Shown in pieces: positions 2,022 through 58,328 of a DNA stretch of 64,000 nucleotides. Source of the DNA: Botryllus schlosseri (taxonomy: Eukaryota); NCBI GenBank assembly GCA_051294905.1, contig CM119377.1:10540001-10604000 (forward strand). Reading direction: 5' to 3'. Positions within the stretch are counted from its first letter, which is position 1, and each line of letters starts with the position of its first letter. A program made the translations under genes and the position numbers. Below the pieces are notes generated by a model, which saw only the letters and a list, made by a program, of their open reading frames with translations, did no database searches and was not told the DNA's origin.

Positions 2022-2331
2022 AAATAATTCCTCGAAAGATTTCTCAAATGTTTCCATCAAATCAAAACTCATTGTGTATCAATGATATCTCATTATCATA
2101 GGAGGGTTAGATAATATTGGACATACATTTGGTACTAGCTTGATTGCTGTTAGTCCTATGAATTTTGCAAGGACTTATCTATCTGTCCTCAATTCAATTT
2201 TCCATTTGTCAGGACTTGAAAGTTTTCTTGCTGATGATTTCGAAACTTATGATGACAGCGGTAATCTTTGCACAATCATTACATACAAAATCTCCCCAAG
2301 TGTAACCTATACTTTAAACAGCTTAAAGTAG
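2022..2331 (+). pseudogene. Kelch-repeat relic, 3' fragment of a K1/K2-type BTB-Kelch gene
   Basis: Frame 1 reads SKLIVYQ*YLIIIGGLDNIG...AVSPMNF...YDDSGNLCTIITYKISP, matching K1/K2 SKLIQYEDFLFVIGGRDNGG...TVSPMNF...YDAGTNIWTIIACKISP. In-frame TGA at 2083-2085; no BTB portion upstream. Confidence 0.75.
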
Positions 2332-2685
2332 ACGTGATATTTTCGGTGCTGGCGTTGAAAACATTGGAGTGTTTTGTCTGTAAAGAAATCCTGTGATAAT
2401 AAAAATTTTAGACATTAAGACTTTATTGATCACCATGGTCATCAACATCAACAACAGACATTTTGCAGCATGCCTGTTTCGAAGTATTGCGAACCAGACA
2501 AGTATAATTTCATGACATATATTTGTTTGTTATTCTTGTTGTTTATACTATTTTGGTACCCGCACCGTGTTCCCGAATAGTATACTAGTATGTAATCGTT
2601 TTTCCATTATCAGAATACAAACATCTTATTGTTCCTAAACCCTAACTGTTTAACCATGTCTCGACATGAAGAATACACATAGAAC

Positions 2686-4287
2686 ATGGATGAAGCCGGC
2701 CATTTTAAAGCCCTGATGGCAAGACTTGATTTGATGAGAGAAGAAAGAAAATATTGTGATGTCACCATAACTGTTGAAAGCAAACATATCCATGCACACA
2801 AGGATATCATTTGTGCAGCATCTGATTATTTCAATGCCATGTTTTCTCACGATACATTGGAGAAACAGCAAGGCCTAGTTGCAATGAAAGATGTCAAATA
2901 TGACGCTGTCAAAAAATGCATTGACTTCATTTATAGCGGAAAACTATCGGTATCGATCCTGCAGTGTGAGGATATTTTAACCTGTGTCACTACAATGCAG
3001 TTGATTCAGGCATGCCAAAAAATTGAATATTTTCTGCAAGGAATTTTGAACGTTGAAAGCTTCTTTCTTGTGAGAGATATTGCTCTGAAATTTTCCTTGA
3101 AAAACTTGCTTCACTCATGTGATTCGTTTGCTGTCGACAATATTGTCTCCTTGTCGAAAGTGGAGGATTTCAATACGGAAGAATTGAGTTTCATATCATC
3201 ACTGATATCATCGGAAGCCATGTCTATCATTGAGGATGATAAATTAGCATGTGTGCTCCAATGGTTGAATGCTGATCGCTGCAACCGTGAAACAAACCTG
3301 ATGGGCTTGCTTCAACATGTTAGGGCCCCTAAACTTAGCCCTGGATATTGCAAGTATTTAATGGAGCAAGAATCATTATGCCACACCTCTGTTGAACTTA
3401 TCAGACATCTCTTCGCGGCTGTCGTCGGAGATGGTAAAATTGCTAACTTCAATCCGCGTGATATTCTAAGTGAAGCAAAAATTTCATCACACAACTCAAT
3501 AATTATCTTCAATGAAACTATAGAAGAAGTAGTGTCGTATTTCCCATCAGATGGAAAATTGAATCCGGTTATCAAATATTGTGACCCAATGAAGCCGGAG
3601 GAACTTGCCAGTTGCTCACTTAACAGTGTTTTATATATTATTTTCTGCAATCACCAAGTATTTTCCTTCAACTTGAAGGATAAAAATCTTTCTTGGACAT
3701 CTCTTACAAACTGTAAGAAATCACATGGAAAATATTTGCGATGCACAATTTATCGTAACAATATCTATGTTGGAGGAAATGATTCCTTGGAAAAGTGGGA
3801 TTTAACAAGAAATGAAAATTGGGAAGACGTGGATTTAGAAGAAAATATCTGTGAAGAGTTGAAACTAATACAATATGAAGATTTTCTTTTTGTCATTGGG
3901 GGTAGAGACAATGATGGAAAGGCTGTGAACAATGTGATGAAAAGTTCACCTGGTATCAAATGGATTACAGTTAGTCCTATGAATTTTGAAATGGCCGATC
4001 CATCTGCAGCTGTTCTCCATTCCACCCTGTATGTAGGTGGAGGCCCAAGCAATTATGGTTTGGAAATGTATGATGCTGGGACCAATATATGGACCATCAT
4101 CGCATGCAAGATCTCTCCCTCTCGTTATAAGCTTTTTAATATTGACTATGAAATATTCGGTGTTTTTAAGGAAGACGATGGGTGTTATATTATGGAATTT
4201 GATGCAGAGAATAAAGCGTGGAAAGTGAAAAAGCGTATCCTCACAGGCGGCATTTGGGAGCCTGGAACAGCAACAGCTTTTTATTAG
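2686..4287 (+). CDS. BTB-BACK-Kelch protein K1 (kelch-like, putative Cullin-3 adaptor), 533 aa, intronless CDS
   Basis: BTB motif CDVTITVESKHIHAHKDIICAASDYFNAMF, BACK region (LACVLQWLNAD...LLQHVR) and Kelch blades (IYVGG, FVIGG, LYVGGG...YD..TNIW). Close paralog of K2. Confidence 0.93.
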   Translation: MDEAGHFKALMARLDLMREERKYCDVTITVESKHIHAHKDIICAASDYFNAMFSHDTLEKQQGLVAMKDVKYDAVKKCIDFIYSGKLSVSILQCEDILTCVTTMQLIQACQKIEYFLQGILNVESFFLVRDIALKFSLKNLLHSCDSFAVDNIVSLSKVEDFNTEELSFISSLISSEAMSIIEDDKLACVLQWLNADRCNRETNLMGLLQHVRAPKLSPGYCKYLMEQESLCHTSVELIRHLFAAVVGDGKIANFNPRDILSEAKISSHNSIIIFNETIEEVVSYFPSDGKLNPVIKYCDPMKPEELASCSLNSVLYIIFCNHQVFSFNLKDKNLSWTSLTNCKKSHGKYLRCTIYRNNIYVGGNDSLEKWDLTRNENWEDVDLEENICEELKLIQYEDFLFVIGGRDNDGKAVNNVMKSSPGIKWITVSPMNFEMADPSAAVLHSTLYVGGGPSNYGLEMYDAGTNIWTIIACKISPSRYKLFNIDYEIFGVFKEDDGCYIMEFDAENKAWKVKKRILTGGIWEPGTATAFY

Positions 4288-4348
4288 CTTGTCTGAAATG
4301 TTAAATATGGACTGTGACTTTAAATAGTGGCAATCGATGTAACTATAA

Positions 4349-5519
4349 CATTGGGCAAGAATTTTGAACAAAGAATTTGTTGACTTTGATTTTGCTCTTG
4401 GTTTAGGCTAATTTTGCTATGCTGGTTCAAAACATGCCAATGATTTTATTCTATCTCGTCAAGTTTTTGCTCTACTACATATGCCCGAAATATGCAAATT
4501 GTCACGAATCAAGCCATATTACTTTTCCACATATAGAAATCCACACTTTTATCATATAATAAGTTATATGGCAAAGTCAATTCCAACTAGTAGATGCTGA
4601 GTTATTCGAGTTTTTCATTGATAATTCTCGGATTATCCTTGATCGTTGGATTATCAACGAAAAACTCAAATAACTCCGCTTCTACTACTTGGAATTGACT
4701 CATATTTGTTTTTCATCGTCTTTGAAGACAGCTCAACAATTTTGTGGGATCAACAGAAAAATTTGAAAATTAAAAAAAAAAAAATTCCTAATAAATTAAA
4801 AATTTTAATTAGATCTACCGATTCGTATACTTGTTGGAATTGAATCAACTTTGGTGAGCAGCGTTTTTTTTAAGGTAACCTGACAATTTAATCAGTGAAT
4901 GACTGGAATCCGAGGGAAAAAGTTATTTTTGAACAGGCCTAATGCACATGTAACCATAATACACATGTGCCACTCCCGTATGTTTATGTCGGACAGCATA
5001 CATTGAAAAAAGCTAAAATATCTCCATAATTTCCCAGAAAACCTTGACATAGTCAGTGATGGGCAAGGAGAAAGCATCCCCCAATATCTGAAGATGAAGG
5101 GGGTAAGATACCAGAGCAGATTGGAGCTTACATATGTTAGCCAACTATTGCTCAAGTATCAAACGAAACAACCCACAGAATTATGAGTTATTAGCGCAAA
5201 TTTGGACCCTGAAACTCTCACTTTATTTGTATTGCAGAAGCAATATCAGTTTAAATCACCCAAATTAAAGCAGTGCAAATGTTTATTTGGAGTCTATTGA
5301 TTTACTTTCGACTGCTTGTGGTTTTTGTAACGTTTTATACAATAAACACAAAATATTATAAGCAGTACTTTTATGTGGGTTATGAGACAATGGGGTGGGT
5401 GCCTACCCCAAAAACCTGACGTGATAGAGAAAAACGGAAGTCATTTTCTAATTCAGCGCCCAAAATGTAGTCGAAATCAATTGTCTGATCAAAGTCAACA
5501 TAAATTGTGTTTACCAGTG
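4349..5519. mobile_element. ~1.17-kb non-autonomous insertion with CACTG-like termini and TAA flanks
   Basis: TAA|CATTGGG...CCAGTG|TAA. The segment is absent at the paralogous position downstream of K2 (~8310-8325), where the flanks are contiguous. Contains a 50-bp-arm inverted repeat (4576-4625 / 4650-4699). Confidence 0.6.
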
Positions 5520-5859
5520 TAATTGATGATATATTTTATGACTACATCTAATATCTGGCACTGCTTATGTTTGATGTCTTCAGTCCTTGTCAATCCGACT
5601 AATTAAACGCTAGTTGAGAGCAAACCATAAGCTGAAAAATATTTGGTCACATTAGCCAACTCGGCTGATTTTGTCTATGATTCAATCGTTACATATAAAT
5701 ATTTGTCAAATATGTTCAATAATTTATTGTTTGATACTATTGCCTTATTCGCAATGACTGAATGTTATCTTGTGGTAATGATTGGTTACATTTGTTTTAT
5801 TCTGATTTCACAGAATAAGTTAACGCAATCCCACATTGGTGTTGCTTTGAATACGGTGA

Positions 5860-5952
5860 AATGCATATTGACCAAAAACTTGTGTATTCCAGTTTGAATA
5901 TCCTAATCCTCATAAAGCTACTGTCTGCATATGGCGGAACCTGTCCGGTAAG
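5860..5952 (+). pseudogene. Relic of the UNC-93-like 5' region and start codon (MAEPV...)
   Basis: 5860-5946 aligns with 9900-9990 (AATGCA(T/C)ATTGAC...CAGTTTGAATATC...TACTGTCTGCAT-ATGGC(G/A)GAA(C/T)CTGT). ATG at 5931 corresponds to UNC-93 A ATG 9972 (MAESV). Homology stops a few codons later. Confidence 0.7.
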
Positions 5953-6633
5953 ACTTAATTTAGTAGGGACTTTTTATTTGTTCAAATTCAGACGCTCCAA
6001 GATTGATAGTGACGACCCGTATCAAAAGCATTGTTGTGACAGTTGCACAAATAATTTTTCTGAACAAACGTGAATCGATTTTGTCAAACTTTGAGTTCAC
6101 TAAAGTGATGTGACGGACAAGCTATTTGCTAATTTTAGTGCACCCAATATCACTGTGACGTTCGGCAGTAGACATAACCAATCGCCTGTTACTGCAACAT
6201 AAAACTTCTTGTGTGCCAGTAATCCTTAAAATTCCATGAACGCTTCATTACACGCTATGGTGCTCATGCAAAACGTGTTAGCGACCCCAAGATTAAGTAT
6301 CCACAATACAAAATGTTTTTTAGGAACAACATGCCATAGATTTAACGACATGTACAGACGAGAGCATTGAACTGGTAACCATAATTGTGGTGTTATGACC
6401 CCGTAGACAGGTCTATACTGTATGTATTTATTTTGTAAGTGTGTTTGCTCCCCGCCAGAAACCCACTGGTCGGGAACCATTAGACTAGTATAATTTCATG
6501 ACACATATTTCCTTGTTATTCTTGATGTTTATACTGTTTAGGTAATGTTCCCGAATAGTATGTAACGTAATGATGTAATGATTTGTACATTCTCAGATCA
6601 TAAACTTCTTTTGTTCCTAAAAACTCTATCAAC

Positions 6634-8265
6634 ATGTCTGAACATGAAGAATACACATTAAACATGGACGAAGCCGGCCATTTTAAAGCTGTAATGACAA
6701 GGCTTGATCTGATGAGAGAAGAAGGAAAATATTGTGATGTCACCATAACTGTTGAAAGTAAAAATATCCATGCACACAAGGATGTCATTTGTGCAGCATC
6801 TGATTATTTCAATGCCATGTTTTCTCATGATACATTGGAGAAACAACAAGGCATAGTTACAATGAAAGATGTCAAATATGAAGCTGTTAAAAAATGCATT
6901 GACTTCATTTATAGTGGAAAACTATCGGCATCAATTCTGCAGTGTGATGACATTTTAACTTGTGTCACTGCAATGCAATTGATTCAAGCGTTCGAAAAAA
7001 TTGAATATTTTCTCCTAGAATTCCTGAACCTTGAAAACTTCTTTCTTGTGAGAGATATTGCTCTAAAATTCTCCATGAAAAACTTGCTCAACTCTTGTGA
7101 TTCATTTGCTGCTGTCAATATCGTCTCTATGTCGAAACGTGAGTATTTCAATACAGCAGAACTGAGTTTCATATCCACACTGATATCATCGAATAACCTG
7201 TCTCTATCTGAGGATGTAAAATTAGCATGTGTGCTCCAATGGGTGAATGCTGATCGCTCCAACCGTGAAGCAAACTTGATGGGCTTGCTTCAACATGTTA
7301 GGGCGCCTAAACTTAACCCGGGCTATTGCAAATATTTAGTGGAGCATGAACCAATATGCCACACCTCTGTCATACTTGTCAGACATCTCTTCTCAGCTGT
7401 CTTCGGGGATGAAAAAATCAAAAACATTGATCCATGGGATATTCTAAGTGAAGCAAAAATTCTGTCTCACAACTCAATAATTATTTTCAATGAAACTCTA
7501 AAAGAAGTAATGTCATATTCTCCATCAGACGGGAAATTGAAATCGGTTGTCAAATATTCTGACTCAATGAAGTCAGTGGAGTTCACCAGTTGTTCACTCA
7601 ACAGTGTTCTATATATTTTTTTCTGCAATCATCAAGTATTTTCTCTCAACTTGAAGGACGAAAATATTTCTTGGACATCTCTTCCTAGCTATCAGAGATC
7701 ACATGGAAAATTTCTGGACTGCACAATTTATAATAATGATATCTATGTGGGAGGGAATAATTCCTTGGAAAAGTGGGATTTAACAAAAAATGGAGATTGG
7801 GTAGACGTAAATTTAGAAGGAAATATCTGTGACCAGTCGAAACTAATACAATATGAAGACTTTCTTTTTGTCATTGGAGGTAGAGACAATGGTGGAAAGG
7901 CTGTGAACAATGTGATGAAAAGGTCACCTTCTATTAAATGGATGACAGTTTGTCCTATGAATTTTGAAATGACCTATGCATCTGCGGTTGTTCTCCATTC
8001 CACTCTGTACGTGGGTGGAGGCCCCCAACAGCATAATTTGGAGATGTATGATATCAAGACCAATATATGGACCATCATCACATGCAAGATCCCTCCCGTA
8101 TTTCTTAACCTTTTGAAGGTTGACTATGACATCTGTGGTGTCCATATGGAAGACAGAGAGTGTTATATCACGGTATTTGACACTGCAAATAAAGCATGGA
8201 ATGAGAAAAAAGCAATCCTTGCAGGCGAAATTTGGGAATCTGGAACGTCAACAGCTTTTTCGTAG
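6634..8265 (+). CDS. BTB-BACK-Kelch protein K2, 543 aa, intronless CDS
   Basis: Same BTB/BACK/Kelch motifs as K1; 55/60 identical residues over the first 60 aa of the BTB region (hand count). Confidence 0.93.
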   Translation: MSEHEEYTLNMDEAGHFKAVMTRLDLMREEGKYCDVTITVESKNIHAHKDVICAASDYFNAMFSHDTLEKQQGIVTMKDVKYEAVKKCIDFIYSGKLSASILQCDDILTCVTAMQLIQAFEKIEYFLLEFLNLENFFLVRDIALKFSMKNLLNSCDSFAAVNIVSMSKREYFNTAELSFISTLISSNNLSLSEDVKLACVLQWVNADRSNREANLMGLLQHVRAPKLNPGYCKYLVEHEPICHTSVILVRHLFSAVFGDEKIKNIDPWDILSEAKILSHNSIIIFNETLKEVMSYSPSDGKLKSVVKYSDSMKSVEFTSCSLNSVLYIFFCNHQVFSLNLKDENISWTSLPSYQRSHGKFLDCTIYNNDIYVGGNNSLEKWDLTKNGDWVDVNLEGNICDQSKLIQYEDFLFVIGGRDNGGKAVNNVMKRSPSIKWMTVCPMNFEMTYASAVVLHSTLYVGGGPQQHNLEMYDIKTNIWTIITCKIPPVFLNLLKVDYDICGVHMEDRECYITVFDTANKAWNEKKAILAGEIWESGTSTAFS

Positions 8266-8656
8266 CCTGAAATGTTAAATATGGCATGCGACTCTAAAGA
8301 GTGACATTCGATGTAATTATTGCTGATGATACATTTTATGACTTCATTCAATATCTGCTACCGGGTTATGTTTCATGTCTTCATCTCATGTCAACACCGA
8401 CTCATTTGTCGCTTTTTAAGAGCAAATCATAAGTTAAAAAGAGATTTGGTCACATGAGCCAACTCAGGTTGATTTTGGAGATGATTCAATCCTTACATAT
8501 AAAAATTTGTGAAATATGTTCATAAAATTATTGTTCGATACTATTACCTTATTTACAATGGCCGAATGTTATCTCGTGGTAATGATGGGCTACATCTCTT
8601 TTATTCTGATTTGACAAAGTGAGTTTGTGCGATCCTACATTAGTGTTCCTTTAGAT

Positions 8657-9886: not shown

Positions 9887-9971
9887 CTTTAGATACAGTG
9901 AAATGCACATTGACGAAAGACATTTGTACATTCAGTTTGAATATCATCAACCTCATAGATTTACTGTCTGC

Positions 9972-14812: not shown

Positions 14813-14858
<46 letters not shown>

Positions 14859-39900: not shown

Positions 39901-42900
39901 CAATAACCGAAATCTTTCACTATCATCAAGGGAGGCGTGTCTAAAAATGTTTGAGAACCACTGCTTTAGATAGTTCAACATGTATCGGTCAAACCAGCCA
40001 CTCATATATATTGCAAGATTTCTAGAAAATACAGATACCAGAGTTGATATCTATCCGTGTCTATTTCAGATGTGCGGAGGTCTCCTCGCCTACGTTGTTT
40101 TATACGGATTCGATCAGATACCTGTGCCAAGCTTAGATTCCTTCCAAGAGTGCCAAGCCCTTAATGCAACCACCGTAAACACCACATCCTGCCTTTCAAA
40201 TCATACCTCGTACCAATTTTGCGGCATACACGATTGTCAAGATCCCGACGTCATCAACGAAACGATACAACATTACAAACCCATAAACTCGATATCACTT
40301 TATGTTTTGATCGCGATCTCTTCATTGCTGGCGGTTTGTGCGGCAGTTGTTCATGCAATTTTTGTTCCAAGCGATAAGATTTTCGAGCACAAGCAAAATT
40401 TTTACTCGGCGCAAATGAACATAATAGCGCGACAGAGTGAAGATGGAGGAGATGTGAGTTTGTTGAAGAATACAGATGAGGATGGTGTGAAGCCTACTGC
40501 ATTATATGCACCATCTAAGGTAAGTACCAGACCCACGTATATGGTTACTATGGGACCGATATTTTCAGTAGCCCAATACAATGCTCACTAAACTAGTGGT
40601 TTTCTTTTTCGGATTAGTTTTTAGACAAAATTCTGTCAAGTCGAGCATAGTTTTTATGGATTTTCATAGTGTCTATTTGTGCAACTATCATAGCAACTGG
40701 GCGAATTACCCTTGTATCGAGGCAATTAAATATGGTTTTGATATTGCATCTCTTTACGGAACTGTATCACTATTATTCTTCATGTGTTTGCGATTATGAG
40801 CTACAGTTGTAGCATGTTATCGTTGTATATTTGTCTGACATTCGTCCTAATGTACCTTTTTCAAGTTGCTCACTTGCTATTTTTGACCGCATAATTTTAT
40901 ACCGTACTTCTACAACATGATTTCTTCCAAACGGCACCATCAACCACTTAAAGCACCTCTGTTATCAAACAATTTGTCCTGAAACCAATTTTTTGCGCTA
41001 CGAGGTCAAAACTCCCGTCCTATGTGCCATTTTGATATCGAATTGAGAAGAAGTTTAATTGTGAAAAAATCTGCATTCAGGGTCAGAGTTTATCCAAGCA
41101 GTGTGCTGAAATCTCGAAGGCAATATGGAGGCATGTTTGTCACGCCAAACTGTTGCTTATAGTACCAATTACTTTTTACAACGGACTGACTATGGCGTTT
41201 GTGGCAACTGAGATGACGAGAGCGTTCTCGTCTTGCATCATCGGAGTGCAATGGGTAAGCAGTGGTTTTCGAATAATAGGTGTGGGTACCTACCAAGATT
41301 CAATAATGTTATTATTGGTTCGTTGACATATGAGCATGCTACATAGCATGCGACACTTCGGCATGCATCAATTGGGTATCCCACGCATGAGCATGTGGGT
41401 TAAATTATGGGTTAGGGGTGGGTTAGGGATGGATTTATGGCTGGGTTAGGGTTAGGGTTTGGGTTAGGATATATATAAGGGTTATTTCCAGGTGTATGTT
41501 ATGGGTTAGGGCAAGTTTTTTGGTTATAATTTCACATACTGAAGTGTCCCATGCTGCCATTGTGTCGCATGCGCATATGTCGGGCAACCGTTATTATTAC
41601 TACATTATGCTGCTACTACATTCATCATCGTAATTTTATTCGTTTCACAAGCTTTCGAAGCACCACTCCTTCATCAGGTGTTAAAGCTTTACGCCACTCC
41701 GACAGCTCGTGTAATGAATAAAATTATTAATTTGTTAATTTGTAAGGAGACATTAAGTAACATGTGATAGCTGCCAAGACCTTACTTACATGTAGGTCAC
41801 ACCTACGACTACGAGGACTATTTGTTCACGTGTTTTTTGTGTTTACAGTTGGTACTACGGTACTTCCGTTTCAACTTGTTTGCACGCTCCCTGTTTCAAA
41901 CCTGACACCGCTTACTCTTTCTTTTCTCTCTGAAGTAGTTTTGTCTTGTCTAATACTTGCACATGATCGTAGTTTTCGTCGATTTCTTGTATTTATAGTT
42001 TTACTTAAAATATCATCTATAAACGCTTCAATCAGAATTATAGAGGCACGGGTTCCTCAAAGTTTATAAAGTCTACTGCAGTCGTGGTATTTTTTAAACT
42101 ATTCTTTAAGCAAATATTGTCTCAACTCAACAACAACTGAAACAAGTATATTTTCGCAGGTTGGAATTGGTATGGCTATATACGGTTTCTTCGATGCGGT
42201 ATTTTCATGGATCGTGGGGAAATTCGGTAGAAAATTAGGAAGGATAGCGCTGTACACAATTGCGCTTGTACTGGATTTCGGAAACTATGTCTACGTGATC
42301 TTGTGGTCTCCCAGTGAATTTATTTTGCTGTCAGTTCTCATTATCTACATCACGTTCGGTAGCACCGATGGAATATTTCAGACCATAATAAACGGTAAGC
42401 ATTTGTTTATGACAATATGCATCACTTAACAGAAGCAATGGTACGGAAAGAGTCATAATCGAGTCACATGATATTGATAAAATCCTGTCTTTGATTTACC
42501 TGGAAGTAGGTCAGATGACATCTGAAGTTTTCTGACTCTTTGGTCAATGTTTGTACACAATAACATACTTTATAACGCGCTGTGCAATATTAAGCAGGTA
42601 ATTTTGAATCGATGTTGAATCTGGTAAGCTGTACCAATCAGAGCAGCCCTGGTCGTGTCATATAGGCATTCTTTATTGCTTTCTATGACTGATCTGACAA
42701 TATTATAGATCTTGTGATAGTAGTGTTTCAAATGGTGATGTTAGTTGTAAAATACTCTTCTAATTCATCATATCAGTTACGCACATGGACTATTTTCCAC
42801 AAGATGAAGACCTCGCAGTACTTGTTTGGAATACGGTGATTTTATTTGGATTTGCTGCGGGCTACGCGATAAGTCCATTCATGTGCGTTGGAACCAGAGT

Positions 42901-44671
42901 GTACCTCAACCTTGGCGTGCTAATATTTGGATATCTTTGCCTCGGTAAGACTCTTATTTCACAAGTTTGGTGCAGATTGGTCAAAGTAGTCGGCATTTGT
43001 ACCCAAGTAGAAGGGATATCAAAATTACTTCGAGTGGAACTAGAAAATGAAGGCCTGAAAATTACTCAAGTGTTTCAAAATAGATGACGGTAGTTGAGGT
43101 GTCGCATATTTTTTGCAATTAACCCGATATGAATTATTTTCAAAATTGCAGGCTGCATCTTCGTGACCAGCGCAAAATGACTAATATGACACTTTAAATA
43201 GGCACGATTTTCGTAAATATATTCATCTGCCGTGACACAGGGACTGTTTCGCCCATGTTATGACAATTTCACTCTACTTAACAAAATTATAGATGCAAAA
43301 ATTTGTTGCAATTCACTCTTCACACAATTCAAAATGAACCTCTTACGTTGAAAAACAATTGCCAATGCTAGGAAATGACACAATCGCTCTAAACTTTTTT
43401 CCATGATTGTGATGCATACTTTACTATGCTAGAGTTGAAATGTCAAGGCCTACTCATACTATTGAAAAGCAATTCGTTCAAAATTAGAAGCACCCATCTA
43501 ATTGTATACTAATTCTGAACTTTTAAGCAAATGTCACTATTTTTATATAATCAAAAGCGGTGCCGGTCAGGCATTGGTCAAAGTAGTCTATGTTGCTGCT
43601 CAAGTAGAAGTTACTCCGTAAAGTTCTACTCAATTACAAATAGAAGTAGCAATTTCTGAGACCGTTCAAAGCTACTTCATATGGAATTAGAAGAGGTTTG
43701 AAAAGTATTCAAGCAAGTAGTTTCAAAAAGTAGATTTATTCACGGGGTCACACACTTCTTGCAAATGACGCTTCAAATATGATATTACAAATGATTTTAT
43801 TGATGCTACAAATAGATACAATCATTGAAATTTTAGTCAGTTACCACGACACAGGTGCCATGCATCTCCACTCATAAAAGTGATACAAAATCTATAGTCT
43901 ATGAAGTAAGTAGTATTACATAGAGACTGTTTAAGTACAAGTGGAAGTAGTAGCGTAACCAATTCAGCAAATAGGTAAAACCTACTTGAGTACCTTGACA
44001 AAGTAGAAATATTTTGTTGTGGTTCAGTTCTGTATATAATATAGGACTGTCTTTACATCTACTGTATCCATTTTGATTTTAGACATTTATGAAAGTCTTA
44101 TTATTGTGCTCAAAAACTGCAATATTATTATAATTTTAGAATATTGAATACAGTGCTGCATCTCGTTGTTGCATTCAGTTAAATCAGCGTAAATGTACAA
44201 CATTCACTATATGTATATGTAGAAAATCTTCATGTTTAATTGTTTATATATCTCGCTGAACTATCTATGATGTGATAACTAAGCAGTAATTCTTGTGAAC
44301 AGTATTTGTAACTCGTTATGCTATTTTTCTTCTCCTTGTGTTCTTCATTTTGTACTTTAGGATAAATTATGAACATCACGCTTTGAAAACCGAGATAGCA
44401 GTTTAGCCGACATTCTGGACTGGTAGTAACTTTTATCCATTGCATTTATGTAATTCCTACATAAACTCTTTCTGTCCCTCTCTTAATGTGACCTCACATT
44501 TTGCTGAATTCTTGGGAGTTATGCTTTCAGTTGACTAACCAACGGAGCTATTTTCTTTCAGTGGCAGCAGAATATTTTGAACGCAAGGACAAGGCATCGA
44601 AACAAACACCTGCCGATGATGGTGATGACGCTCCTGTTGTTTCTGAGCGATCAAGTGCAATTATCTCTTGA
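36994..44671 (+). CDS. UNC-93-like MFS membrane protein C (8 exons, ~538 aa)
   Basis: Exons 36994-37141, 37690-37839, 38806-38987, 40070-40519, 41081-41254, 42160-42394, 42777-42944, 44562-44671. All GT-AG; total 1617 nt in frame. SLQSSINIEDGLG, FCGIHDC, DGIFQTIIN motifs. Confidence 0.9.
37964..38125 (+). mobile_element. tRNA-derived SINE (family 1), 3'-truncated, in intron 2 of UNC-93 C
   Basis: TAGCGTAATGG / GGTCCGATCCC boxes; body aligns with 35375-35520. Confidence 0.75.
39085..39344 (-). mobile_element. tRNA-derived SINE (family 2)
   Basis: Minus strand A box TAGCGAAGTGG (39334-39324) and B box GGTTTGAGTCC (39290-39280); body matches 25635-25830. Confidence 0.7.
39772..39963. mobile_element. 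192-bp hAT (Charlie-like) MITE
   Basis: TIR CAGTGGTTCTCAAAC / GTTTGAGAACCACTG; TSD CTTTAGCT / CTTTAGAT (1 mismatch). Confidence 0.88.
41316..41590. mobile_element. ~275-bp inverted-repeat element with internal telomere-like (GGGTTA)n tracts
   Basis: Imperfect ~45-bp TIRs (GGTT..GACATATG.GCATGC...ACACTTC); interior GGGTTAGGGGTGGGTTAGGG...GGGTTAGGGTTAGGGTTTGGGTTAGG; lies in intron 5 of UNC-93 C. Confidence 0.65.
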
Positions 44672-47914: not shown

Positions 47915-48050
47915 AACAAATTAGATTATAACTAAAATTAGAGGATATGAACATTTGACAATTAGATTAGAACATAGGTACATTTCACAAATTAGATTAG
48001 AATTAGAGCATAGAAACATTTCACAAATTAGATTAGAATTAGATTACCGG
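47915..48050. repeat. Short degenerate tandem repeat (ACATTTCACAAATTAGATTAGA units)
   Basis: Three to four imperfect ~30-36-bp units built from AATTAGATTAG. Confidence 0.7.
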
Positions 48051-49993: not shown

Positions 49994-52900
49994 ATGAGAG
50001 ATGACAGGTTTGACAAGGGCAAGGAGCAGAAAAAGATTATTCGCTCATTCGCCTTCTACAACGTAGGGATCTTCCTGTTGTGGTGTTCATTTGTAGGATT
50101 ACTCAGTCTGCAATCAAGTATCAACATTGAAAATGGTCTGGGTAAGCAAATAGGTCCTTTTGCTTCAATATCCTGCAACTAGCATTAATTTATCCAACAT
50201 CAGTCGATACTGGTTGTTAAGGTCCCCTTAGAGCAGAGTAGTCTACATTCCTACTCAAGTAGAAAACCACAAATTTCTAGTCAATTACAAGTAGTTGTAG
50301 TGATTTTCCAGACACGTCAAACTACTGCAAGTGGAAGATGACAGTAGATGTGGCTGCGGTGACACATACTTATATTACCTTCGTGCGTTGGCAGGACGGC
50401 TACTTTCAAAACGCATCTTCGCAAAATGACTAGTAATATGACTCATATAGATAGAGCGATTAACAAAAATATAATCTGATACTTTGACACTAGGCAATTT
50501 CGCCTGGTTGTTATGGTAATTTCTCTCACAAAGGTGATTCAACCATTCCATAAACTACTCTCTGCTTTAGTATATGTAAAAGTAAGTAGTTTTGCCTAAA
50601 AAAACTATTCAAGTAGAATTTGTTAGTCTAAAAACATGACCACTTTAAGTAGTAGAAGTAGGGGCAAAATCTACTGAGTACTCTGAAAAAGTAGAAGTGC
50701 TTGGTTACTGACCACCTCTGGGCATAATGGAATCAGTCAGTCGTTCACAAGCCGATTCATTAACTCTTTCGACGCCGAGCTAAATTTCACGATTGTCTTC
50801 AAAACGCCGCGATTTTCATCAAATAACCCCAATTTCAACCGACCGTAACTTCGTCGCTACCTTAGCTACCGAGTCGTACCTACGTCCGTATTGTAGCCGC
50901 GAACGATATCTATCTAATGATGCGTAACGTGCCTTGATTGATCCTGTTGTGTTGCTAGGACAGGCTTCGGTACGAACTGAAGTTTGGCTGATTTCACGCG
51001 CGCTGCTGCCAAGGTATGGATTTTGTTGGTGTTTCTATGGTACTTATAGATTAGCTGTGACGTTGTAAATTTCACAGAATATTCTCAATATATTATATAT
51101 TGATAATATATTATCCTTAAATCGTTAATTCCTTTTCAATGGCAATGCGGAGGTTCAGAACCGTCGTGAAATACTGCTGCCGACATGATCTTCGGACGTC
51201 GATGCTTCAAGGTTATCATTGTGACGTCAAATCCGCAATAATGGCTCGAAAATTTGACTTCTGCTAGTACCGGTACTCAAGTTTGTTTTTCAGGCGCAGT
51301 AACATACCGACGGAGCCCATTTGTGTACGATTACAAGCAACGATCTGCACAAAAACATCATTATTTGTCACCGTTGAGTCCTCGTCATCTCCCGATGCAA
51401 TTTTACGTTTGAAAAACTTGAATAAATACGTATATATTGGTGTGAAGTCTGTGTTGTCGCAGTACATGTACTGACTTGGTGGCTTCAGTAGATCCGTATT
51501 TTAACGTAACGCGCGATGTGTCGCTAAAGATTGGTGATAATGATGTAAAATGTCTTTAGGTATTATTGGCATCTGTTGAAAATCATCACCGTCGTGGAAA
51601 TATATATCAAATAAAGTTACTATTCCGCACAGGTAATCCAGCGAAATTGCCTCTTAGCAGCAAGTCTTGAATTTTGAATTCATTACCGCACAATGCCCCG
51701 ACTGCCATGAACGCAAAACGGCATGTCAGATTTCGAGACAAAAATACACTCTCTCGATTTAGCGAACATATGGGGATACGCGGCGTTTTGAAGACAATCT
51801 CTAGCGAACATATGGGGATACGCGGCGTCGAAAGAGTTAATGTGGTACAGAAATAGACCATGAGCTTTGACAATACATTAACTGTAACGACTTCCAGTAA
51901 CCGAATTAAGTTCTACGGAAAATTTCTCAGTATCGAATACAGGTCTCTTGCAACATATAGGATTACAGGCCTATTCATACACCACCGAGGAGACAAAATA
52001 TCAATCTCAAAGCCCTCAATTCATCAGACCTCCATCGTGAACACTTTTCTTCTTTATAAAAGAATACTTAATAACTGAGGCATTTCTCTTTGCAGGCATG
52101 GTAACCCTTGCCGTGACTTTCACAGTGCAAATCCTGTGTTCGATATTTCTCACTCCTGTGGTGATACGCCGACACGGTGCGAGGACCTGGCTGATTATCG
52201 GAGACTTGGGAGTGGTTCCGTACATCCTTGCCAATTTATATCCAAGTGAGTTGAATCATGATATTTCATATTATACTCATGCAGATGCGTTCAGTAATGG
52301 AGTACCGTGCTTCTACTTATTCGGAGTAAGCTACTAATGTGGACTTTGCATATGCCTACCTGTTCTACTACCTCAAGTGGCAATGTTTTTCGACTACTTC
52401 CACTTTCAGGCAAAATTACTTACTTTTTTACACTTTTGACCTTGAAAAGTATGAAGTTGTTTTTGGTTGAGTTAGCATCACTCATAAGGGGAAATTGTTA
52501 AAGAGCCGAGTGATATAGTATAGCCCCCGTGTCATGGAAAATAAATATATTTATAGCATTGCTATTCATTTTGCGTTAGTCGTGAAGAATCATCTTGTAT
52601 TTTGGAAATAGCGACTTCTGATTAACTGTTCCTATTTCTATTTGAGTACCGACAATAACTTATTTGACCATCTCTGTCAATTCCTTCCATTATGGAAATC
52701 TGATACGCGGCCCGTTTGTCAAAAAGGTTACACACCCCTGGACTACACAACTGATAGAAAATTTTACATAAATGAGTATAACACAATCACTTCAGGATAT
52801 TTCACTCTGATTCCCACTGGCATCATGCTAGCCGTTTTCCAATCAAGTCTGTGGCCGAGCATGTGTCTCGTCAACGTGATTTATGCCACTTTATACTCCG

Positions 52901-55900
52901 AAGTCAGTAAAAGACCAAAGGACGTTCATACGATTGCATTCACCGGCTATTTCTTCACCGCATTTCAAATCTCACAGGTAAGCTGTCATTTCATTCCATT
53001 GCTATTTCAAGGCCGTCGATTAAATTTGTGATGAGGCTGAGTATTTCTGGAGATGGCAACAACAGCATAGCTCCACTTTTCTGCAGTACTTGAGTGGTTG
53101 TTTTAACTAACTTCCATTTAACTTCAACAATTTTTGCCGTGAAGCTACTAACTTTTTACACTTCAAGAACTTTTTATAATTGAAGATTTTGTCAAGTACA
53201 AAATAATGATTGGATAGCTTTGCATCACTTTCATAAGTCAAATCGTCATAACAACCGGGAGGTGCAATGACTGAATATAATTTTGGAGATCGAAAGTATT
53301 TGCGATTTGATTATTAGTTGTGCATTAGACGCGCGATCCACCTAACAATTTTGAAGGCTTCACTTGTTACATCTTGTTCATATCTACTTTCTAACGGCAT
53401 TTACTTGAGCAATTTTCAGAACTAAGTCTTCTTTTACATCAAGTAAGTTTAACCTGCTTTATCATAGGCGCCGACTTTTATTTTTTTAGAGGTGGCGAAT
53501 TCTTGTGACGTCATAATTGTTCCATATCGATGACTTCATCGTCGTACGGAAACGCACTTTACTGCATTCCGCTGGTGTACATGTGTAGAGTTAAACCATT
53601 CGCGTGACGTTTTAATATCGGCCCTGCACTCATTAACATCAAACCATGCAGTCGAGTTATTAAATGGAATCTTAAAACGGTACGAACATTTGAAGTGTGA
53701 CTGCGGCCTGCACTACCAGTCTGTCCGACGGAATCTTCAGTTGCATCAATGGTATTCACGCGCAATGCCCGTGTGAGTAACGAAATACACTACGCACTGG
53801 CCTTGCAAGTAACACACGACAACTCTCGAATACTTCCAGCAGACAATAATGATGATTATAAACGCGAAATCGCGCAGCCAATCAGTAATTGTCTCTTGCG
53901 GTTTCTTGCTTCGCGTTGACCAACTCGCATCGCGGCAATTGTTTGATGATTAAAACATTGGTGCATTTCCCGATTTAAGTTCGCGGAGCATTTCTGGAGT
54001 ACATCGGTCAATTCGTAAATTCAATCTGCATGTGGACGGCCGCCAACGCATACTAATTGAATTAGGTGTTGACGGCCGCACAAATTTCCTTCTACGGCCG
54101 CGGGTTGGCCACCCCCGGGCTAGAATTAATTCCACTTCCAGCCGCATGCCGCGTTCTTACCAATAGAAATCCACTGTCTATTTAATGCCTAATAGTTTAA
54201 TATTCGATAATGTTGTTCTGGATACGAGAACATCCAGCAATCAAGTTTATCGGAATGTAGAAGGTTACCTGTTCAAACGAATCGAATAAAATCAGAATTT
54301 GTGCCACCCAGAATCCTGTGATGCATCCCGTTAATAATGAAAGGATCAAAGGAACACTGAAAAATGACTTTGTGCGACAATTTCGGAGTACGAATGTATC
54401 AAGTAGAAAACATAGAATATGGATGATGGCAAATGAGAAAGCGTGTATTCTAATCAGTATCGCCACGAATCGGTTTTGAGTGTGACACCGTATTGAGTAG
54501 CTTTCGTGGCGACAATTATTTTCTCATTATATCGGTGTTTAAGCTGTATTGCTGTATTGCTGCATTTCCCGATTAATGCCACTGGCAAAGCTTTGTTATA
54601 GAAACGAATCTGCGCAGAAATGAATTCCAATTTGCAGGCACACACCAACACACCCTCCAATTTCGCGCTGCGATTACCTATCACGAAGCTAGCTAGCTCA
54701 TGAATGGTTTTGTAAACGAATATGGGCGCACATAATTTAGATTTCAGAAAAGCACAACGTATATTTAGGTGCCTGGTCGGGAGAGGAGATCTAGCATGGT
54801 GCTTCTCAGCACACGCTAGGCGCGTAGCCAGTCGAAAAATTAGGGAAATTTGGATTTTTTTTCAAATTTACCAATATAGCATCAATTCAATGCGGGTCAA
54901 GTACATGTGTAAGTGGCGATCATATAATCTCTCCGTATCAAGGATTTTAGGCGTATGATAAGCTTGCCAACGAGTCCGGGAGTGCTGTCAATTACCGAGT
55001 CCCTGTTCTCTAGCGAATAATTAAATACGCGCGCGTATTACGCAGTCTCGGCGACAGTTTTCGCAAATCAAAATGTCCGAACCTGATGGCACCGATTTCA
55101 GGTGGTTCAGACCTTTGTCGTCTTTTAGAACTCGAGCCACGATACACATCTTCTGATTGTTACGATCAAGTATTAGCGGGAATCAATTTCGCACGTTAAA
55201 GTCTGTTTGCAGCGATTCGATGTTATTCAGTTTCGCGAAATCGCTTTTTAATCAATATGACATAAAACAATCACTAATTAGCGTAAACTCGACCGCATTG
55301 TCGCCAAACCAGCGAGAGATAGGAGCCAAAGCATGCTAGGCCCGAGACGCGATATTCAGGCCATAGGCCAGCAATGATCTCTTTCACTCCAGGCCTATTG
55401 CATATGTTATTGTGTGAGCCAGCGATGATATCGTGCACACCAGGCCGAAGCCGCCAATGCAGATGCGATTGCGCAGTCAAGCGATGATGTAGTATGACTT
55501 GGGCGTTTGAGCATTTTGTACGAGGTGGCTGGGCCACCTCGTAACCTCGTAAGTCGGCGCCTATACTTGTAATTGGTAATATTCAAGAGCAATATTCCTG
55601 CTTGTACTCCAGTACACTGAGTCATTACTTTGACCACAGCTGTAAACTCGAGGAAAATTTGAAATCAATACATTCACATTGATGATAGCCTACTCCAACG
55701 ATTAAAGATTACTAGAATCGCATTTTCAAATATTTCAGATGTGTGGAGGACTTCTCGCATATGCCGTCCTTTATGGGTTCGATCAAGTACCCATACCAAA
55801 TTTGGAATCATTTGAACCATGCCAACCTAGCAACACGACCAGTGAAAATATAGACATAGCATGCACGTCGAACCATTCTTATCTATATTGTGGCGCTCGT

Positions 55901-58328
55901 GACTGCCAAGATCCCGAAATCATAAATGAAACGATACAGCAATACAAACCGATCAACAAGATATCACTGTACGTGTTCATAGGAATTTGTTCAGTGATGG
56001 CAATCGGGGCTGCAGTTGTCCACATCATATTTGTACCAAACGACAAGACGTTCAAGCGCAAGCAGAAATATTACACAGCCCAAATGGCTATGCTAGCAAT
56101 GGATGACAAGCCGAATACAAGCACGGGTGACGACAACAAACATTGTGCTGCCATTGAAAACACACTGTATTCATCATCCAAGGTGTTTCACATGCATTTC
56201 ACTTGCACATACTTCCTACGTGTATATTATTGACAGGGTGATAGTTTGTTTAAACAAAGCATGGAGATTGGAAGATCAGTTTGGAGGCATGTCCTCAATC
56301 GGAAACTATTACTTTTGCTTCCAATAACGTTCTATAACGGGCTCGCTATGGGCTTTGTCGGCACCGAGATGACAAGATCGTTTACCTCGTGCACTGTCGG
56401 GGTGCAATGGGTATGTCATTTTTTTTTATATGAAGTCGATGCCCTCATGCCCATATGATTTCTAGAAGCAAAGTAGTCATAGATAGTTATAAACTTTGAA
56501 GTTCTGCCAAGCAGCAGAGCATTTTCTTTCATTCATCTACCAATAGCTCACCACTTCAAAATATATTCCATTAGATGACTGAATCAGAGTGGTTACTCTA
56601 CTGGTACTCTTATTACACCGTGGCCGTGACTTGGATATCAAGATTGGTTCGAATTAATGTCAAACAAAACTATTTTCTACTTAATCAACAGAACCACCTC
56701 AGTGGGTGGAGTGAAAAAAAAAGATAGTAGCAGTGTTCTCATACTGACCACGTTTACACTTTACATGATTTGTGGCGCAAGAAATATGAATTATTTGCTA
56801 CACAAGCTATTTCCACCTTATCCAGTCTCCAGTTCATACCTCGCATGAAGGACGTCATGACCAATATGCTAGTTTGTAACCGTAATTTTGTTAGTGTTAT
56901 TAGAGTGATTGGAATTTTTTAGGCATACCGGTATTAATATTGATGGTGGACAGAAAGATGTCACTCCTTGGTGGAATGATGAATATGAAAAAATTTGACT
57001 CCGCCGACCTTATGTTAAATCTCAAAAAAAATTCCTAAGCATAACTTGCTTTGTGGTTGCAATAGAAACAAATATGTTGCGATTTTCTACAGGTTGGTAT
57101 TTGCATGGCGATATATGGCCTTTTTGATGCTATTTTTTCTTGGATCGTTGGAAAGTTTGGCCGCAGACTAGGAAGGATAGCATTGTTTACAATTGGCTTG
57201 ATTTTGGAATGTGGAAACTATGTATATGTGCTGCTCTGGGCACCAACAGAGTATATGTTGTTCTCAGTACTTATATTTTATGCGACTTTTGGCAGCACCG
57301 ACGGGATATTCCAGATAATAATCAATGGTACGTACTGCAAAGTAACATCCAGTTTGCTATAGGCACGTGTTTTATGTTACTTCCAAACATTGCAGTGCTA
57401 CTATCATACCATCAGCTTTTGCCTTCTTGAAAATTGGAATGAACTTGGTAACATTGTCACTATTAAAACCAGTAGTGTTGTAAGAAATACTGGTCGCAAC
57501 TTCCTGAAATATTTATTTTGGTATGTTTCAGTGACTGACATGGACTACTTTCCCCATGATGAAGATCTTGCAGTGTTAGTTTGGAACACAGTTATTTTGA
57601 TGGGTTTCGCCGTGAGCCACGCGATTAGTCCAATTTTCTGCGTCAGTGTCAGAGCGTACTTGAACATTGCAGTACTTGTGATTGGGTACCTTTGCATTGG
57701 TAAGATGAAAAGAGTCAATGTTTTCAACTTTTTGCAGGTGCTGGTCCAAACAGTCTGACCTATGCTTCATTGCGGCAACTAGGTAAATAGTCGAGAATTG
57801 AAGTGAAAATATCAAATGGAAGGTTTTTATAAGTCAAAAATTGTGACATGGGACCTGTAATTGCTGATTACCCATAACTAGTTTTGAAATCTCTTTATCT
57901 GTGTTCCTAATTCTTTCGAGTTCAATAGAGTTCATAGATGCAACAACTTCATCCACAATATATGGAATCTATTTCTGGTGGTAAATGTCAGCATTAAAAC
58001 AGCTAATAGCCACTCGAAACAGTTGAAAGTTATATTAGCATTAAAATTGTTGAAAAAAGTAGCATAATGAAGACAGCACATGATAGTACACAATTGAACT
58101 ATTGAGCTATTTTTTGTTCTTGTTCGCCTACAGAAAAATCTAGCTGTTTGTCAATGTATTTCCAGACTGTCTATTTGGCAAATTACTACAATTCAATTAT
58201 TCATGTTTAATCTTTCAGTGGGTGCTGAATTCTATCACCGCAAGGATCAAAAAGCTTCAGAAAAATCAGCGACAGAAGTTGGCAACATGCAATCTACCAA
58301 TGAAGAATCTATCGCAATCAATTCCTAG
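49994..58328 (+). CDS. UNC-93-like MFS membrane protein D (8 exons, ~536 aa)
   Basis: Exons 49994-50141, 52096-52245, 52796-52977, 55739-56182, 56237-56410, 57093-57327, 57532-57699, 58219-58328. All GT-AG; 1611 nt in frame. Closest to C. AATAAA at 58432. Confidence 0.9.
50764..51836. mobile_element. piggyBac-like non-autonomous element in intron 1 of UNC-93 D
   Basis: TTAA on both sides, perfect 14-bp TIR CTCTTTCGACGCCG / CGGCGTCGAAAGAG, subterminal direct repeat TAGCGAACATATGGGGATACGCGGCGT x2. Confidence 0.8.

What the first reader, a model, noticed from the sequence alone, without database searches (positions are those of the whole stretch)
2022..58328. Interleaved, co-duplicating BTB-Kelch + UNC-93 array (candidate two-family module)
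Seen in sequence: the order is Kelch relic, K1, UNC-93 start relic, K2, UNC-93 A, UNC-93 B(pseudo), K3, UNC-93 exon 2-3 relic, K4, UNC-93 C, UNC-93 D, all on one strand. The 2490-5950 block is a duplicate of 6475-9990 that includes both the Kelch gene and the UNC-93 5' region, so the duplication unit spanned both families. Established: BTB-BACK-Kelch proteins are Cullin-3 substrate adaptors. The UNC-93 family includes UNC93B1 (TLR trafficking chaperone), C. elegans UNC-93 (K+ channel regulator) and GlcNAc transporters (fungal Ngt1, rice NOPE1). Inference: a rapidly turning-over locus pairing ubiquitin-ligase adaptors with membrane transporter/chaperones, reminiscent of immune or environment-response clusters. 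I know of no description of this pairing. Linkage could also be passive hitch-hiking.
Basis: partly seen in the sequence, partly recalled or inferred. Interest (0 to 1): 0.7.

Follow-up and report, generated by a model that had tools for sequence, protein, structure and literature searches.

The report
Sea-squirt Kelch and UNC-93 gene cluster
A sea-squirt chromosome stretch really does interleave four ubiquitin-ligase adaptor genes (BTB-Kelch) with four UNC-93-like membrane-protein genes, but the pattern is explained by sloppy head-to-tail DNA copying that kept only the Kelch genes whole, and the two families are not neighbours in the related sea squirt Styela clava, so nothing shows that they work as a pair.

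Summary
Observation confirmed almost to the base. On the + strand lie four intact intronless BTB-BACK-Kelch genes, four 8-exon UNC-93A-like genes (B carries an in-frame TAG), a Kelch relic and two UNC-93 relics. The 2496-5961 block copies 6482-10000, including the UNC-93 A start codon.

The "two-family module" reading is not supported.
- Both recent duplications are segmental tandem copies whose breakpoints cut through a UNC-93 gene. One took K2 plus the first 29 nt of A. The other took B exon 2 onward plus K3. Only the Kelch gene arrived whole each time.
- The ages do not match. Kelch pairs have dS 0.36 and 0.51 (dN/dS 0.36 and 0.25). Every UNC-93 pair is saturated at synonymous sites.
- In Styela clava, the nearest annotated genome (TGT 82% identical), the closest Kelch relatives form pure intronless Kelch arrays on one chromosome. 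The UNC-93A-like genes lie on five other chromosomes. No member of one family was found within 10 kb of the other in seven loci.
- Earlier notes of this scan, which I did not check, report the same Kelch family next to zinc-finger genes elsewhere in this genome.

An old duplication of a Kelch-UNC-93 block is compatible with the trees but implies no shared function.

The parts
2044..2301 (+). Kelch relic, a fragment of the propeller region that matches K1 residues 386-479
   Evidence: tblastn gives 40% identity over 96 aa, E 1.5e-9. ORF blastp agrees.
2686..4287 (+). K1, an intact intronless BTB-BACK-Kelch gene of 533 aa
   Evidence: ORF. Pfam BTB 79 bits and BACK 46 bits. 76% aa identity to K2; dN/dS 0.36, dS 0.36.
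4346..5524 (.). 1.18 kb insertion in duplicate copy 1. It is repeat-like, with an internal palindrome at 4575-4700.
   Evidence: It interrupts the K1/K2 collinear match. Related pieces lie at 25988-26276 and 63782-63888.
5843..5961 (+). Relic of the 5' end of UNC-93 A (upstream sequence plus ATG). It is dead: a stop follows after 6 codons.
   Evidence: 77.5% identical to 9885-10000, E 5e-20. Alignment.
6634..8265 (+). K2, an intact intronless BTB-BACK-Kelch gene of 543 aa
9972..16631 (+). UNC-93A-like gene A. Seven exons were found (9972-10131, 11367-11516, 11578-11759, 12143-12535, 15305-15478, 16108-16342, 16405-16572/16631). The last exon was not identified.
   Evidence: My splice models. 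Full-length blastp to the Styela clava protein named 'unc-93 homolog A-like', E 1e-81 to 1e-86.
17874..22318 (+). UNC-93A-like gene B. It has eight exons and an in-frame TAG at 21083-21085 in exon 5, so it is a probable pseudogene.
23274..24959 (+). K3, an intact intronless BTB-BACK-Kelch gene of 561 aa
   Evidence: Pfam. AlphaFold2 model with pLDDT 85.8. Foldseek matches KLHL22-CUL3 and KBTBD2-CUL3 adaptors over the full length, and the six-blade Kelch domains of KLHL12 and KEAP1 at TM 0.80-0.83.
25057..26582 (+). Decayed copy of UNC-93 B exons 2-3, split by a roughly 1.2 kb insertion. Exons 4-8 are gone.
   Evidence: 25057-25275 matches 18513-18747 at 67.7% (E 3e-28), and 26484-26574 matches 18768-18858. 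These are collinear with 27680-28185 matching 22867-23297, and then with K4 matching K3.
28200..29834 (+). K4, an intact intronless BTB-BACK-Kelch gene of 544 aa
   Evidence: 76% aa identity to K3; dN/dS 0.25, dS 0.51.
36994..44671 (+). UNC-93A-like gene C, eight exons, intact
   Evidence: Exon models. 61% identical to the transcript-like fragment P0132 and 35% to Styela P0243.
49994..58328 (+). UNC-93A-like gene D, eight exons, intact, 65% aa identical to C
58551..59744 (-). Queuine tRNA-ribosyltransferase (QTRT1-like), intronless. It is a flanking gene, not part of the array, and was used to place the organism.
   Evidence: Pfam TGT 491 bits. 82% identical to Styela clava and 72% to Ciona.

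Best explanation
This is a lineage-specific gene cluster in a stolidobranch sea squirt. It was built by ordinary DNA-level segmental tandem duplication followed by birth-and-death decay.

Gene content. Two old lineages of intronless BTB-BACK-Kelch genes (K1/K2 and K3/K4, about 30% identical between lineages) sit among four old UNC-93A-like transporter-type paralogues. A and B are sisters, and C and D are sisters.

The two recent duplications made the interleaving look regular.
- Event 1: a unit of about 3.5 kb running from upstream of K2 to 29 nt into the UNC-93 A coding sequence was copied in tandem. This gave K1 plus a dead UNC-93 start relic.
- Event 2: a unit of about 6.4 kb running from exon 2 of UNC-93 B to just past K3 was copied in tandem. 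This gave a headless UNC-93 copy, which has since decayed to exons 2-3, plus K4.

What was kept. In both events only the compact 1.6 kb intronless Kelch gene fitted whole inside the unit. Both daughter Kelch genes have stayed under purifying selection. The 4.4-8.3 kb multi-exon UNC-93 genes were cut by the breakpoints.

Inferred functions. The Kelch proteins are most likely Cullin-3 substrate adaptors with diverging propellers. The UNC-93-like proteins are MFS-type membrane proteins. Both functions are inferred from family membership, not shown here.

The adjacency of the two families is passive physical linkage, not a selected functional pairing.
For: Shown by tool results:
- The collinear duplicate blocks and their breakpoints lie inside UNC-93 genes.
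- Flanking non-coding DNA was copied with the Kelch genes (81% and 61-68% identity). This means DNA-level duplication, not retroposition.
- K1/K2 have dS 0.36 and dN/dS 0.36. K3/K4 have dS 0.51 and dN/dS 0.25, with the BTB part most constrained.
- All UNC-93 pairs are saturated at synonymous sites (pS about 0.77), so their duplications are much older.
- The relic next to K3 matches B across B's short intron 2 at 67.7%. That distance is similar to the K3/K4 dS, so it fits one event.
- In the Kelch tree K1+K2 and K3+K4 are sisters, and a Logan transcript (P0001) is the outgroup to K3/K4. Styela copies form their own clades, as expected for species-specific birth and death.
- In the UNC-93 tree A-D form one clade made of (A,B) and (C,D).

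Styela clava (assembly GCA_964204865.2):
- The ten closest Kelch relatives with a contig on record are all on OZ123524.1. The three loci fetched there (4.43-4.72 Mb) hold only intronless Kelch genes and no UNC-93 piece.
- Seven UNC-93A-like representatives lie on five other chromosomes. The four loci fetched around them have no Kelch within 10 kb.

Leads not checked here: earlier scan notes say this genome has about 160 such Kelch genes, some in arrays that alternate with C2H2 zinc-finger genes.
Against: - The collapsed order K12-(A,B)-K34-(C,D) agrees with the tree shapes, so an older duplication may have copied a whole Kelch+UNC-93 block. That is still block duplication, but it means the pair has stayed together through at least one round.
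- All eight genes keep one orientation and lie close together, which could allow shared regulation.
- The Styela genes are only 29-35% identical to those here. They are not 1:1 orthologues, so absence of linkage there does not exclude a pairing that arose later in this lineage.
- I could not search the rest of this genome.
- No expression or interaction data were available.
Confidence: 0.8

Rival explanations
1. The cluster is a functional two-family module. The linked Kelch adaptors recruit Cullin-3 to the neighbouring UNC-93-like membrane proteins or their cargo, and selection keeps the genes together and duplicates them together.
For: - The two families are interleaved on one strand.
- Both recent duplication units contained DNA of both families.
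- The collapsed order K12-(A,B)-K34-(C,D) is compatible with an ancient duplication of a K+U block.
Against: - The recent units carried only truncated, dead UNC-93 fragments.
- Duplication ages differ greatly between the two families.
- One UNC-93 gene is decaying (B, with a TAG) while all four Kelch genes stay constrained.
- There is no linkage in Styela clava.
- The same Kelch family is reported next to a different family elsewhere in this genome (unchecked).
- A full-text search found no paper linking UNC-93 with KLHL or Cullin-3 in a relevant way.
Confidence: 0.07
2. The cluster is a shared regulatory neighbourhood. The two families do not interact, but they are kept adjacent because they share a tissue- or stress-specific chromatin domain or enhancers. 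The copy of the UNC-93 A 5' end that now lies about 670 bp upstream of K2 could even lend promoter activity to K2.
For: - All genes share one orientation and lie close together.
- The UNC-93 A 5' relic, including about 130 bp upstream of the ATG, lies between K1 and K2.
Against: - No expression data were available.
- Tandem duplication alone explains the common orientation.
- The linkage is absent in Styela clava.
- The relic is short and has diverged (77.5% identity).
Confidence: 0.1
3. The intronless Kelch genes are retrocopies that inserted independently into a pre-existing UNC-93 array.
For: The Kelch genes lack introns. The K3/K4 similarity at high stringency is confined to the coding sequence.
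Against: - Non-coding flanks, and UNC-93 fragments on the correct side, were co-duplicated.
- No poly-A tail remnants were seen.
- The family is already intronless and tandemly arrayed in Styela clava, so intron loss is ancestral and not linked to these events.
Confidence: 0.03

Closest known systems
KLHL / KBTBD BTB-BACK-Kelch Cullin-3 substrate adaptors (for example KLHL22, KLHL12, KEAP1, KBTBD2)
   Same: K1-K4 have the same three-domain architecture. The K3 model superposes over its full length on the KLHL22 and KBTBD2 chains of their Cul3-complex entries. Its propeller superposes on the six-blade Kelch domains of KLHL12 and KEAP1 at TM 0.80-0.83.
   Different: - K1-K4 share only 17-25% identity with any named KLHL.
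- They belong to an ascidian-specific clade, with a score gap of 395-588 bits for Styela relatives against 244 bits or less for all others.
- They are intronless, tandemly arrayed and fast-evolving: 53-59% identity to the nearest relative in a sample whose TGT is 87% identical.
- Cul3 binding and substrates are untested.
UNC-93 family of MFS-type proteins (UNC93A-like; the solved relative is UNC93B1, PDB 7C76)
   Same: - The gene models align over their full length with Styela clava proteins named 'unc-93 homolog A-like', several of which pass Pfam PF05978.
- A profile of the ascidian relatives hits only UNC93B1 in the PDB, E 2e-15.
- Crude hydropathy shows about 11-12 hydrophobic segments.
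   Different: - This is a divergent, lineage-expanded branch.
- Single exons from the window stay below the Pfam UNC-93 cut-off (16.2 bits against 22.9).
- The closest relatives, P0132 and P0137, hit only MFS_1.
- A long loop with an invariant CG..DCQ motif marks the clade.
- No function is known for this branch, and nothing ties it to TLR trafficking or K+ channels.
Mixed tandem arrays made by block duplication, such as the Kelch + C2H2 zinc-finger arrays noted elsewhere in this genome by this scan
   Same: Unrelated genes are copied head-to-tail as blocks, broken copies included, which gives an alternating pattern. The same intronless Kelch family is involved (AI notes that I did not check).
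   Different: Here the array is small. The recent units contain only fragments of the partner gene, and the partner family's own duplications are much older.

Membership tests
BTB-BACK-Kelch (KLHL-type Cul3 adaptor) | N-terminal BTB/POZ domain | tested here: met
   Pfam PF00651 scores 79-92 bits in K1-K4 against a cut-off of 20.5.
BTB-BACK-Kelch (KLHL-type Cul3 adaptor) | BACK domain following the BTB | tested here: met
   Pfam PF07707 scores 42-50 bits in K1-K4. The profile aligns to the BTB-BACK region of KEAP1, KLHL22 and KLHL3 chains.
BTB-BACK-Kelch (KLHL-type Cul3 adaptor) | C-terminal six-bladed Kelch beta-propeller | tested here: met
   The K3 AlphaFold2 model has pLDDT 85.8. Its residues from about 295 to 560 align over 283-295 columns to the complete Kelch domains of KLHL12 and KEAP1, at TM 0.77-0.83 and rmsd 2.3-3.0. 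Only K3 was modelled.
BTB-BACK-Kelch (KLHL-type Cul3 adaptor) | Binds Cullin-3 and delivers substrates for ubiquitination | not testable with these tools
   The only evidence is fold similarity to the adaptor chains of entries solved in complex with Cul3 (8khp, 8h36). The interface residues were not examined rigorously.
UNC-93 family (Pfam PF05978, MFS clan) | Match to the UNC-93 profile above the curated cut-off | tested here: inconclusive
   - Only single exons could be submitted. Exon 5 of C scored 16.2 bits against a cut-off of 22.9, and exon 6 hit MFS_1 weakly.
- The spliced proteins have no reference, so they were not scanned.
- Styela relatives in the same 99%-supported clade pass the cut-off with 25-41 bits.
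UNC-93 family (Pfam PF05978, MFS clan) | Full-length homology to recognised UNC-93 proteins | tested here: met
   blastp of the spliced models A-D against Styela 'unc-93 homolog A-like' proteins gives E 1e-70 to 1e-95 over about 450-530 residues. A profile of the relatives hits UNC93B1 alone in the PDB, E 2e-15.
UNC-93 family (Pfam PF05978, MFS clan) | Twelve-helix MFS-like membrane topology | tested here: inconclusive
   A crude Kyte-Doolittle scan shows about 11-12 hydrophobic segments in C. No dedicated topology predictor or structure was run.
Co-duplicating two-gene functional cassette | The duplication unit carries complete copies of both genes | tested here: not met
   Event 1 copied only 29 nt of the UNC-93 A coding sequence. 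Event 2 copied B without exon 1, and only exons 2-3 remain detectable.
Co-duplicating two-gene functional cassette | Matching duplication ages in the two families | tested here: not met
   Kelch pairs have dS 0.36 and 0.51. UNC-93 pairs have pS of about 0.77, which is saturated.
Co-duplicating two-gene functional cassette | Linkage conserved in related species | tested here: not met
   In Styela clava the three Kelch-array loci have no UNC-93 and the four UNC-93 loci have no Kelch, and the families lie on different chromosomes. Caveat: the Styela genes are distant paralogues or co-orthologues, and only 10 kb on each side was examined.
Co-duplicating two-gene functional cassette | Co-expression or physical interaction of the two products | not testable with these tools
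   No expression data or complex prediction were available.

The most novel reading that the evidence does not exclude
In this sea-squirt lineage a Kelch adaptor and a UNC-93-like membrane protein became a working pair, for example through Cul3-dependent control of the transporter or chaperone at the membrane. On this reading the pair was duplicated once as a whole block (K12+AB and K34+CD), and the later partial duplications only add new Kelch specificities to the same set of UNC-93 partners.
Probability: 0.06. Interest if true: 0.65.

Novelty: new member of a known kind. Interest (0 to 1): 0.25.

Why it matters
The result shows how a striking alternating pattern of two gene families can arise with no functional link. 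Small intronless genes survive imprecise tandem duplication whole. Their long multi-exon neighbours are cut and leave relics, and those relics mimic co-duplication.

The analysis also documents that sea squirts of this group carry fast-evolving, species-specific arrays of intronless BTB-Kelch genes and an expanded UNC-93A-like family. Neither family has a known function in these animals.

If the pairing were functional after all, it would link Cullin-3 ligases to UNC-93-type membrane proteins, a connection I found in no paper.

Tried and rejected
- Exact look-up of the window's own proteins in public assemblies: the TGT protein is not on record, so this genome is not in that collection.
- Synteny through the Styela TGT protein (P0014): not on record. 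The closest relatives come only from short Logan contigs (1.4-3.4 kb, samples SRR25569784 and SRR32906204), which hold no neighbouring genes.
- First Kelch homologue search with K3 alone: it found only one close hit. A five-sequence profile was needed to reach the Styela family.
- Per-exon Pfam scans of the UNC-93 genes: sub-threshold only. The spliced proteins could not be passed to Pfam, structure or database tools because they have no reference and I did not type them in. They were analysed only in scripts.
- Search for the last exon of UNC-93 A by motif and tblastx: not found.
- The 521 bp between the two K1/K2 copies (5961-6482) matches nothing else in the window.
- Retroposition of the Kelch genes: rejected because the flanks were co-duplicated.
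- Operon-like co-transcription, which is known in tunicates: judged unlikely from intergenic distances of 0.95-7 kb, and not tested further.
- Rfam, tRNA and tandem-repeat scans: nothing relevant.
- Literature searches for UNC-93 with KLHL or Cullin, and for Kelch expansions in ascidians: nothing relevant.

Full report
**What is in the window**

The window is eukaryotic DNA with 35-43% G+C and no gaps. Its one conserved housekeeping gene is an intronless queuine tRNA-ribosyltransferase on the minus strand at 58551-59744. It is 82% identical to the Styela clava protein and 72-73% identical to those of Ciona and Phallusia. The organism is therefore a stolidobranch sea squirt. The genome itself is not in the public gene-position collection.

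**Kelch genes**

Four uninterrupted + strand ORFs carry BTB, BACK and Kelch Pfam domains: K1 2686-4287, K2 6634-8265, K3 23274-24959 and K4 28200-29834.

A model of K3 built from a 22-sequence alignment has pLDDT 85.8. It matches the KLHL22 and KBTBD2 chains of their Cul3-complex entries over its full length. Its C-terminal half matches the complete six-blade Kelch domains of KLHL12 and KEAP1 at TM 0.80-0.83. A sequence profile of the family also finds KEAP1, KLHL22, KLHL3, KLHL12 and KLHL20 chains in the PDB.

K1/K2 and K3/K4 are each 76% identical in protein and about 83% in DNA. The two pairs share only about 30% protein identity with each other. A Kelch fragment at 2044-2301 is a genuine relic.

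**UNC-93 genes**

All-against-all comparison of stop-to-stop ORFs showed four sets of paralogous exons. I assembled them into models with eight coding exons and shared intron phases 1,1,0,0,0,1,1.
- A runs from 9972 to about 16631. Its last exon was not found.
- B runs 17874-22318. It has a TAG at 21083-21085 in the middle of a conserved stretch of exon 5.
- C runs 36994-44671.
- D runs 49994-58328.

Single exons are too short for Pfam (best hit UNC-93, 16 bits). An exhaustive profile search with exon 4 found 110 relatives. The full-length ones include seven Styela clava proteins that NCBI names 'unc-93 homolog A-like', and several of these pass Pfam UNC-93.

My spliced models align with these over their whole length, at E 1e-70 to 1e-95. 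A profile of the relatives hits only UNC93B1 among solved structures. The family assignment is therefore sound, although this is a divergent branch.

**How the pattern arose**

Sensitive self-comparison shows two segmental tandem duplications.

Event 1:
- 2496-4346 matches 6482-8320 at 83.6%.
- 5524-5848 matches 8324-8652 at 81%.
- 5843-5961 matches 9885-10000 at 77.5%.
- Copy 1 carries a 1.18 kb repeat-like insertion and copy 2 a 1.23 kb insertion.
- The last segment contains the UNC-93 A start codon. In the relic the reading frame stops after six codons.
- The unit therefore ran from upstream of K2 to 29 nt into UNC-93 A.

Event 2: a collinear series links the DNA after K3 to gene B and to the DNA before K3.
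- 25057-25275 matches 18513-18747 at 67.7%. This covers B exon 2, its 66-nt intron 2 and the start of exon 3.
- 26484-26574 matches 18768-18858.
- 27680-27784 matches 22867-22957.
- 27900-28185 matches 23028-23297.
- The K4 coding sequence then matches K3.
- The unit therefore ran from B exon 2 to just past K3, about 6.4 kb. In the second copy the UNC-93 part lacks exon 1 and has lost exons 4-8.

In both events the breakpoints fell inside a long UNC-93 gene. Only the compact Kelch gene was copied whole. Because non-coding flanks were copied too, these are DNA duplications, not retropositions.

**Ages and selection**

By the Nei-Gojobori method K1/K2 have dS 0.36 and dN/dS 0.36. K3/K4 have dS 0.51 and dN/dS 0.25. 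The BTB region is most constrained (dN/dS 0.09-0.26) and parts of the propeller least constrained (up to 0.89). All four Kelch genes are thus maintained.

Every UNC-93 pair, including the closest (C/D, 65% protein identity), is saturated at synonymous sites, with pS about 0.77. No whole UNC-93 duplication is as recent as the Kelch ones.

**Trees**

The Kelch genes of this window, one Logan transcript and the Styela genes form an ascidian-only clade (support 100/99). K1+K2 are sisters. K3+K4 are sisters, with the Logan sequence as their outgroup. The two pairs join weakly (85/63). The Styela genes cluster by species.

The four UNC-93 genes form one clade with two Logan sequences, arranged as (A,B) and (C,D).

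Once the recent copies are collapsed, the order K12-(A,B)-K34-(C,D) is compatible with an old duplication of a Kelch+UNC-93 block. Block duplication is what tandem duplication does to any neighbours, so it carries no functional meaning by itself.

**Relatives**

In Styela clava (assembly GCA_964204865.2) the ten closest Kelch relatives with a contig on record (29-35% identical) all lie on chromosome record OZ123524.1. The three loci I fetched there lie at 4.43-4.72 Mb. They contain about eleven intronless Kelch genes, head to tail, and no UNC-93 piece, even by tblastn.

The seven UNC-93A-like representatives lie on five other chromosome records. One of the four loci I fetched is a four-gene tandem array. 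None of the four has a Kelch gene within 10 kb.

The caveat is that the Styela genes are distant relatives, not one-to-one orthologues.

The nearest relatives occur only on short, transcript-like Logan contigs with no neighbours. These at least suggest that both families are expressed in related species.

**Context from this scan**

These are AI notes used as leads only. The same genome is said to hold about 160 intronless BTB-Kelch genes in several clusters, some alternating with C2H2 zinc-finger genes, and follow-ups there also found block duplication without evidence of partnership. I confirmed only that the family is lineage-specific, intronless and arrayed. If the notes hold, Kelch genes sit beside different families at different loci, which again points to passive linkage.

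**Verdict**

The locus does turn over quickly. The 'two-family module' is not supported. The best explanation is passive hitch-hiking during imprecise tandem duplication, with selection retaining new Kelch copies (confidence about 0.8).

A functional pairing remains possible at roughly 6%, and a shared regulatory neighbourhood at roughly 10%. Neither could be tested without expression data, interaction data or the rest of the genome.

No paper in the searched library links UNC-93 proteins with KLHL or Cullin-3 adaptors in a relevant way.

Noticed in passing
window 58551-59744 (-): An intronless queuine tRNA-ribosyltransferase (QTRT1-like, 397 aa) lies tail-to-tail with UNC-93 D. Only 222 bp separate the two stop codons.
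   Followed up: partly
window 32460-33547 and 62956-64000; also 33038-33213 against 61206-61031 (inverted): A dispersed repeat of about 1.1 kb is present in two copies at 85% identity, with a further inverted piece. No Pfam domain was found in its one ORF that I scanned (33256-33489). It is probably a non-autonomous mobile element.
   Followed up: partly
window 4346-5524, 8652-9885, 25275-26484: Each duplicated block has acquired its own insertion of about 1.2 kb since the duplication. The pieces recur elsewhere: 4669-4950 matches 25988-26276, 25635-25818 matches 39091-39274 at 85%, and 9054-9169 matches 54007-54122 inverted at 81%. A 126-nt palindrome lies at 4575-4700. This indicates active small repeats in the locus.
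   Followed up: partly
window 40070-40519, 55739-56182, 12143-12535, 19265-19639 (exon 4 of C, D, A, B): The UNC-93-like proteins carry a long loop after the sixth hydrophobic segment, with several N-x-S/T sites and an invariant C-G-x-x-D-C-Q ... Y-x-P motif. The motif is also invariant in the Styela and Logan relatives (alignments A1 and A5). It appears to be a signature of this ascidian-expanded branch, and its function is unknown.
   Followed up: no
L004-L006 (Styela clava OZ123524.1, 4.43-4.72 Mb) and L001 (OZ123526.1, 10.01-10.04 Mb): Styela clava has pure head-to-tail arrays of intronless BTB-Kelch genes spaced about 4-8 kb apart. It also has a separate four-gene tandem array of UNC-93A-like genes. 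Both families are therefore independently expanded in that species.
   Followed up: partly
L007:18992-21007 (Styela clava OZ123517.1): An intronless 671-aa gene with weak ubiquitin and faint Armadillo hits lies 3.8 kb downstream of a Styela UNC-93A-like gene. I did not look at it further.
   Followed up: no
window 21083-21085: A single TAG is the only detected defect in UNC-93 B. All splice phases and exons are otherwise intact. The gene could be a very recent pseudogene, a polymorphism or a sequencing error.
   Followed up: partly
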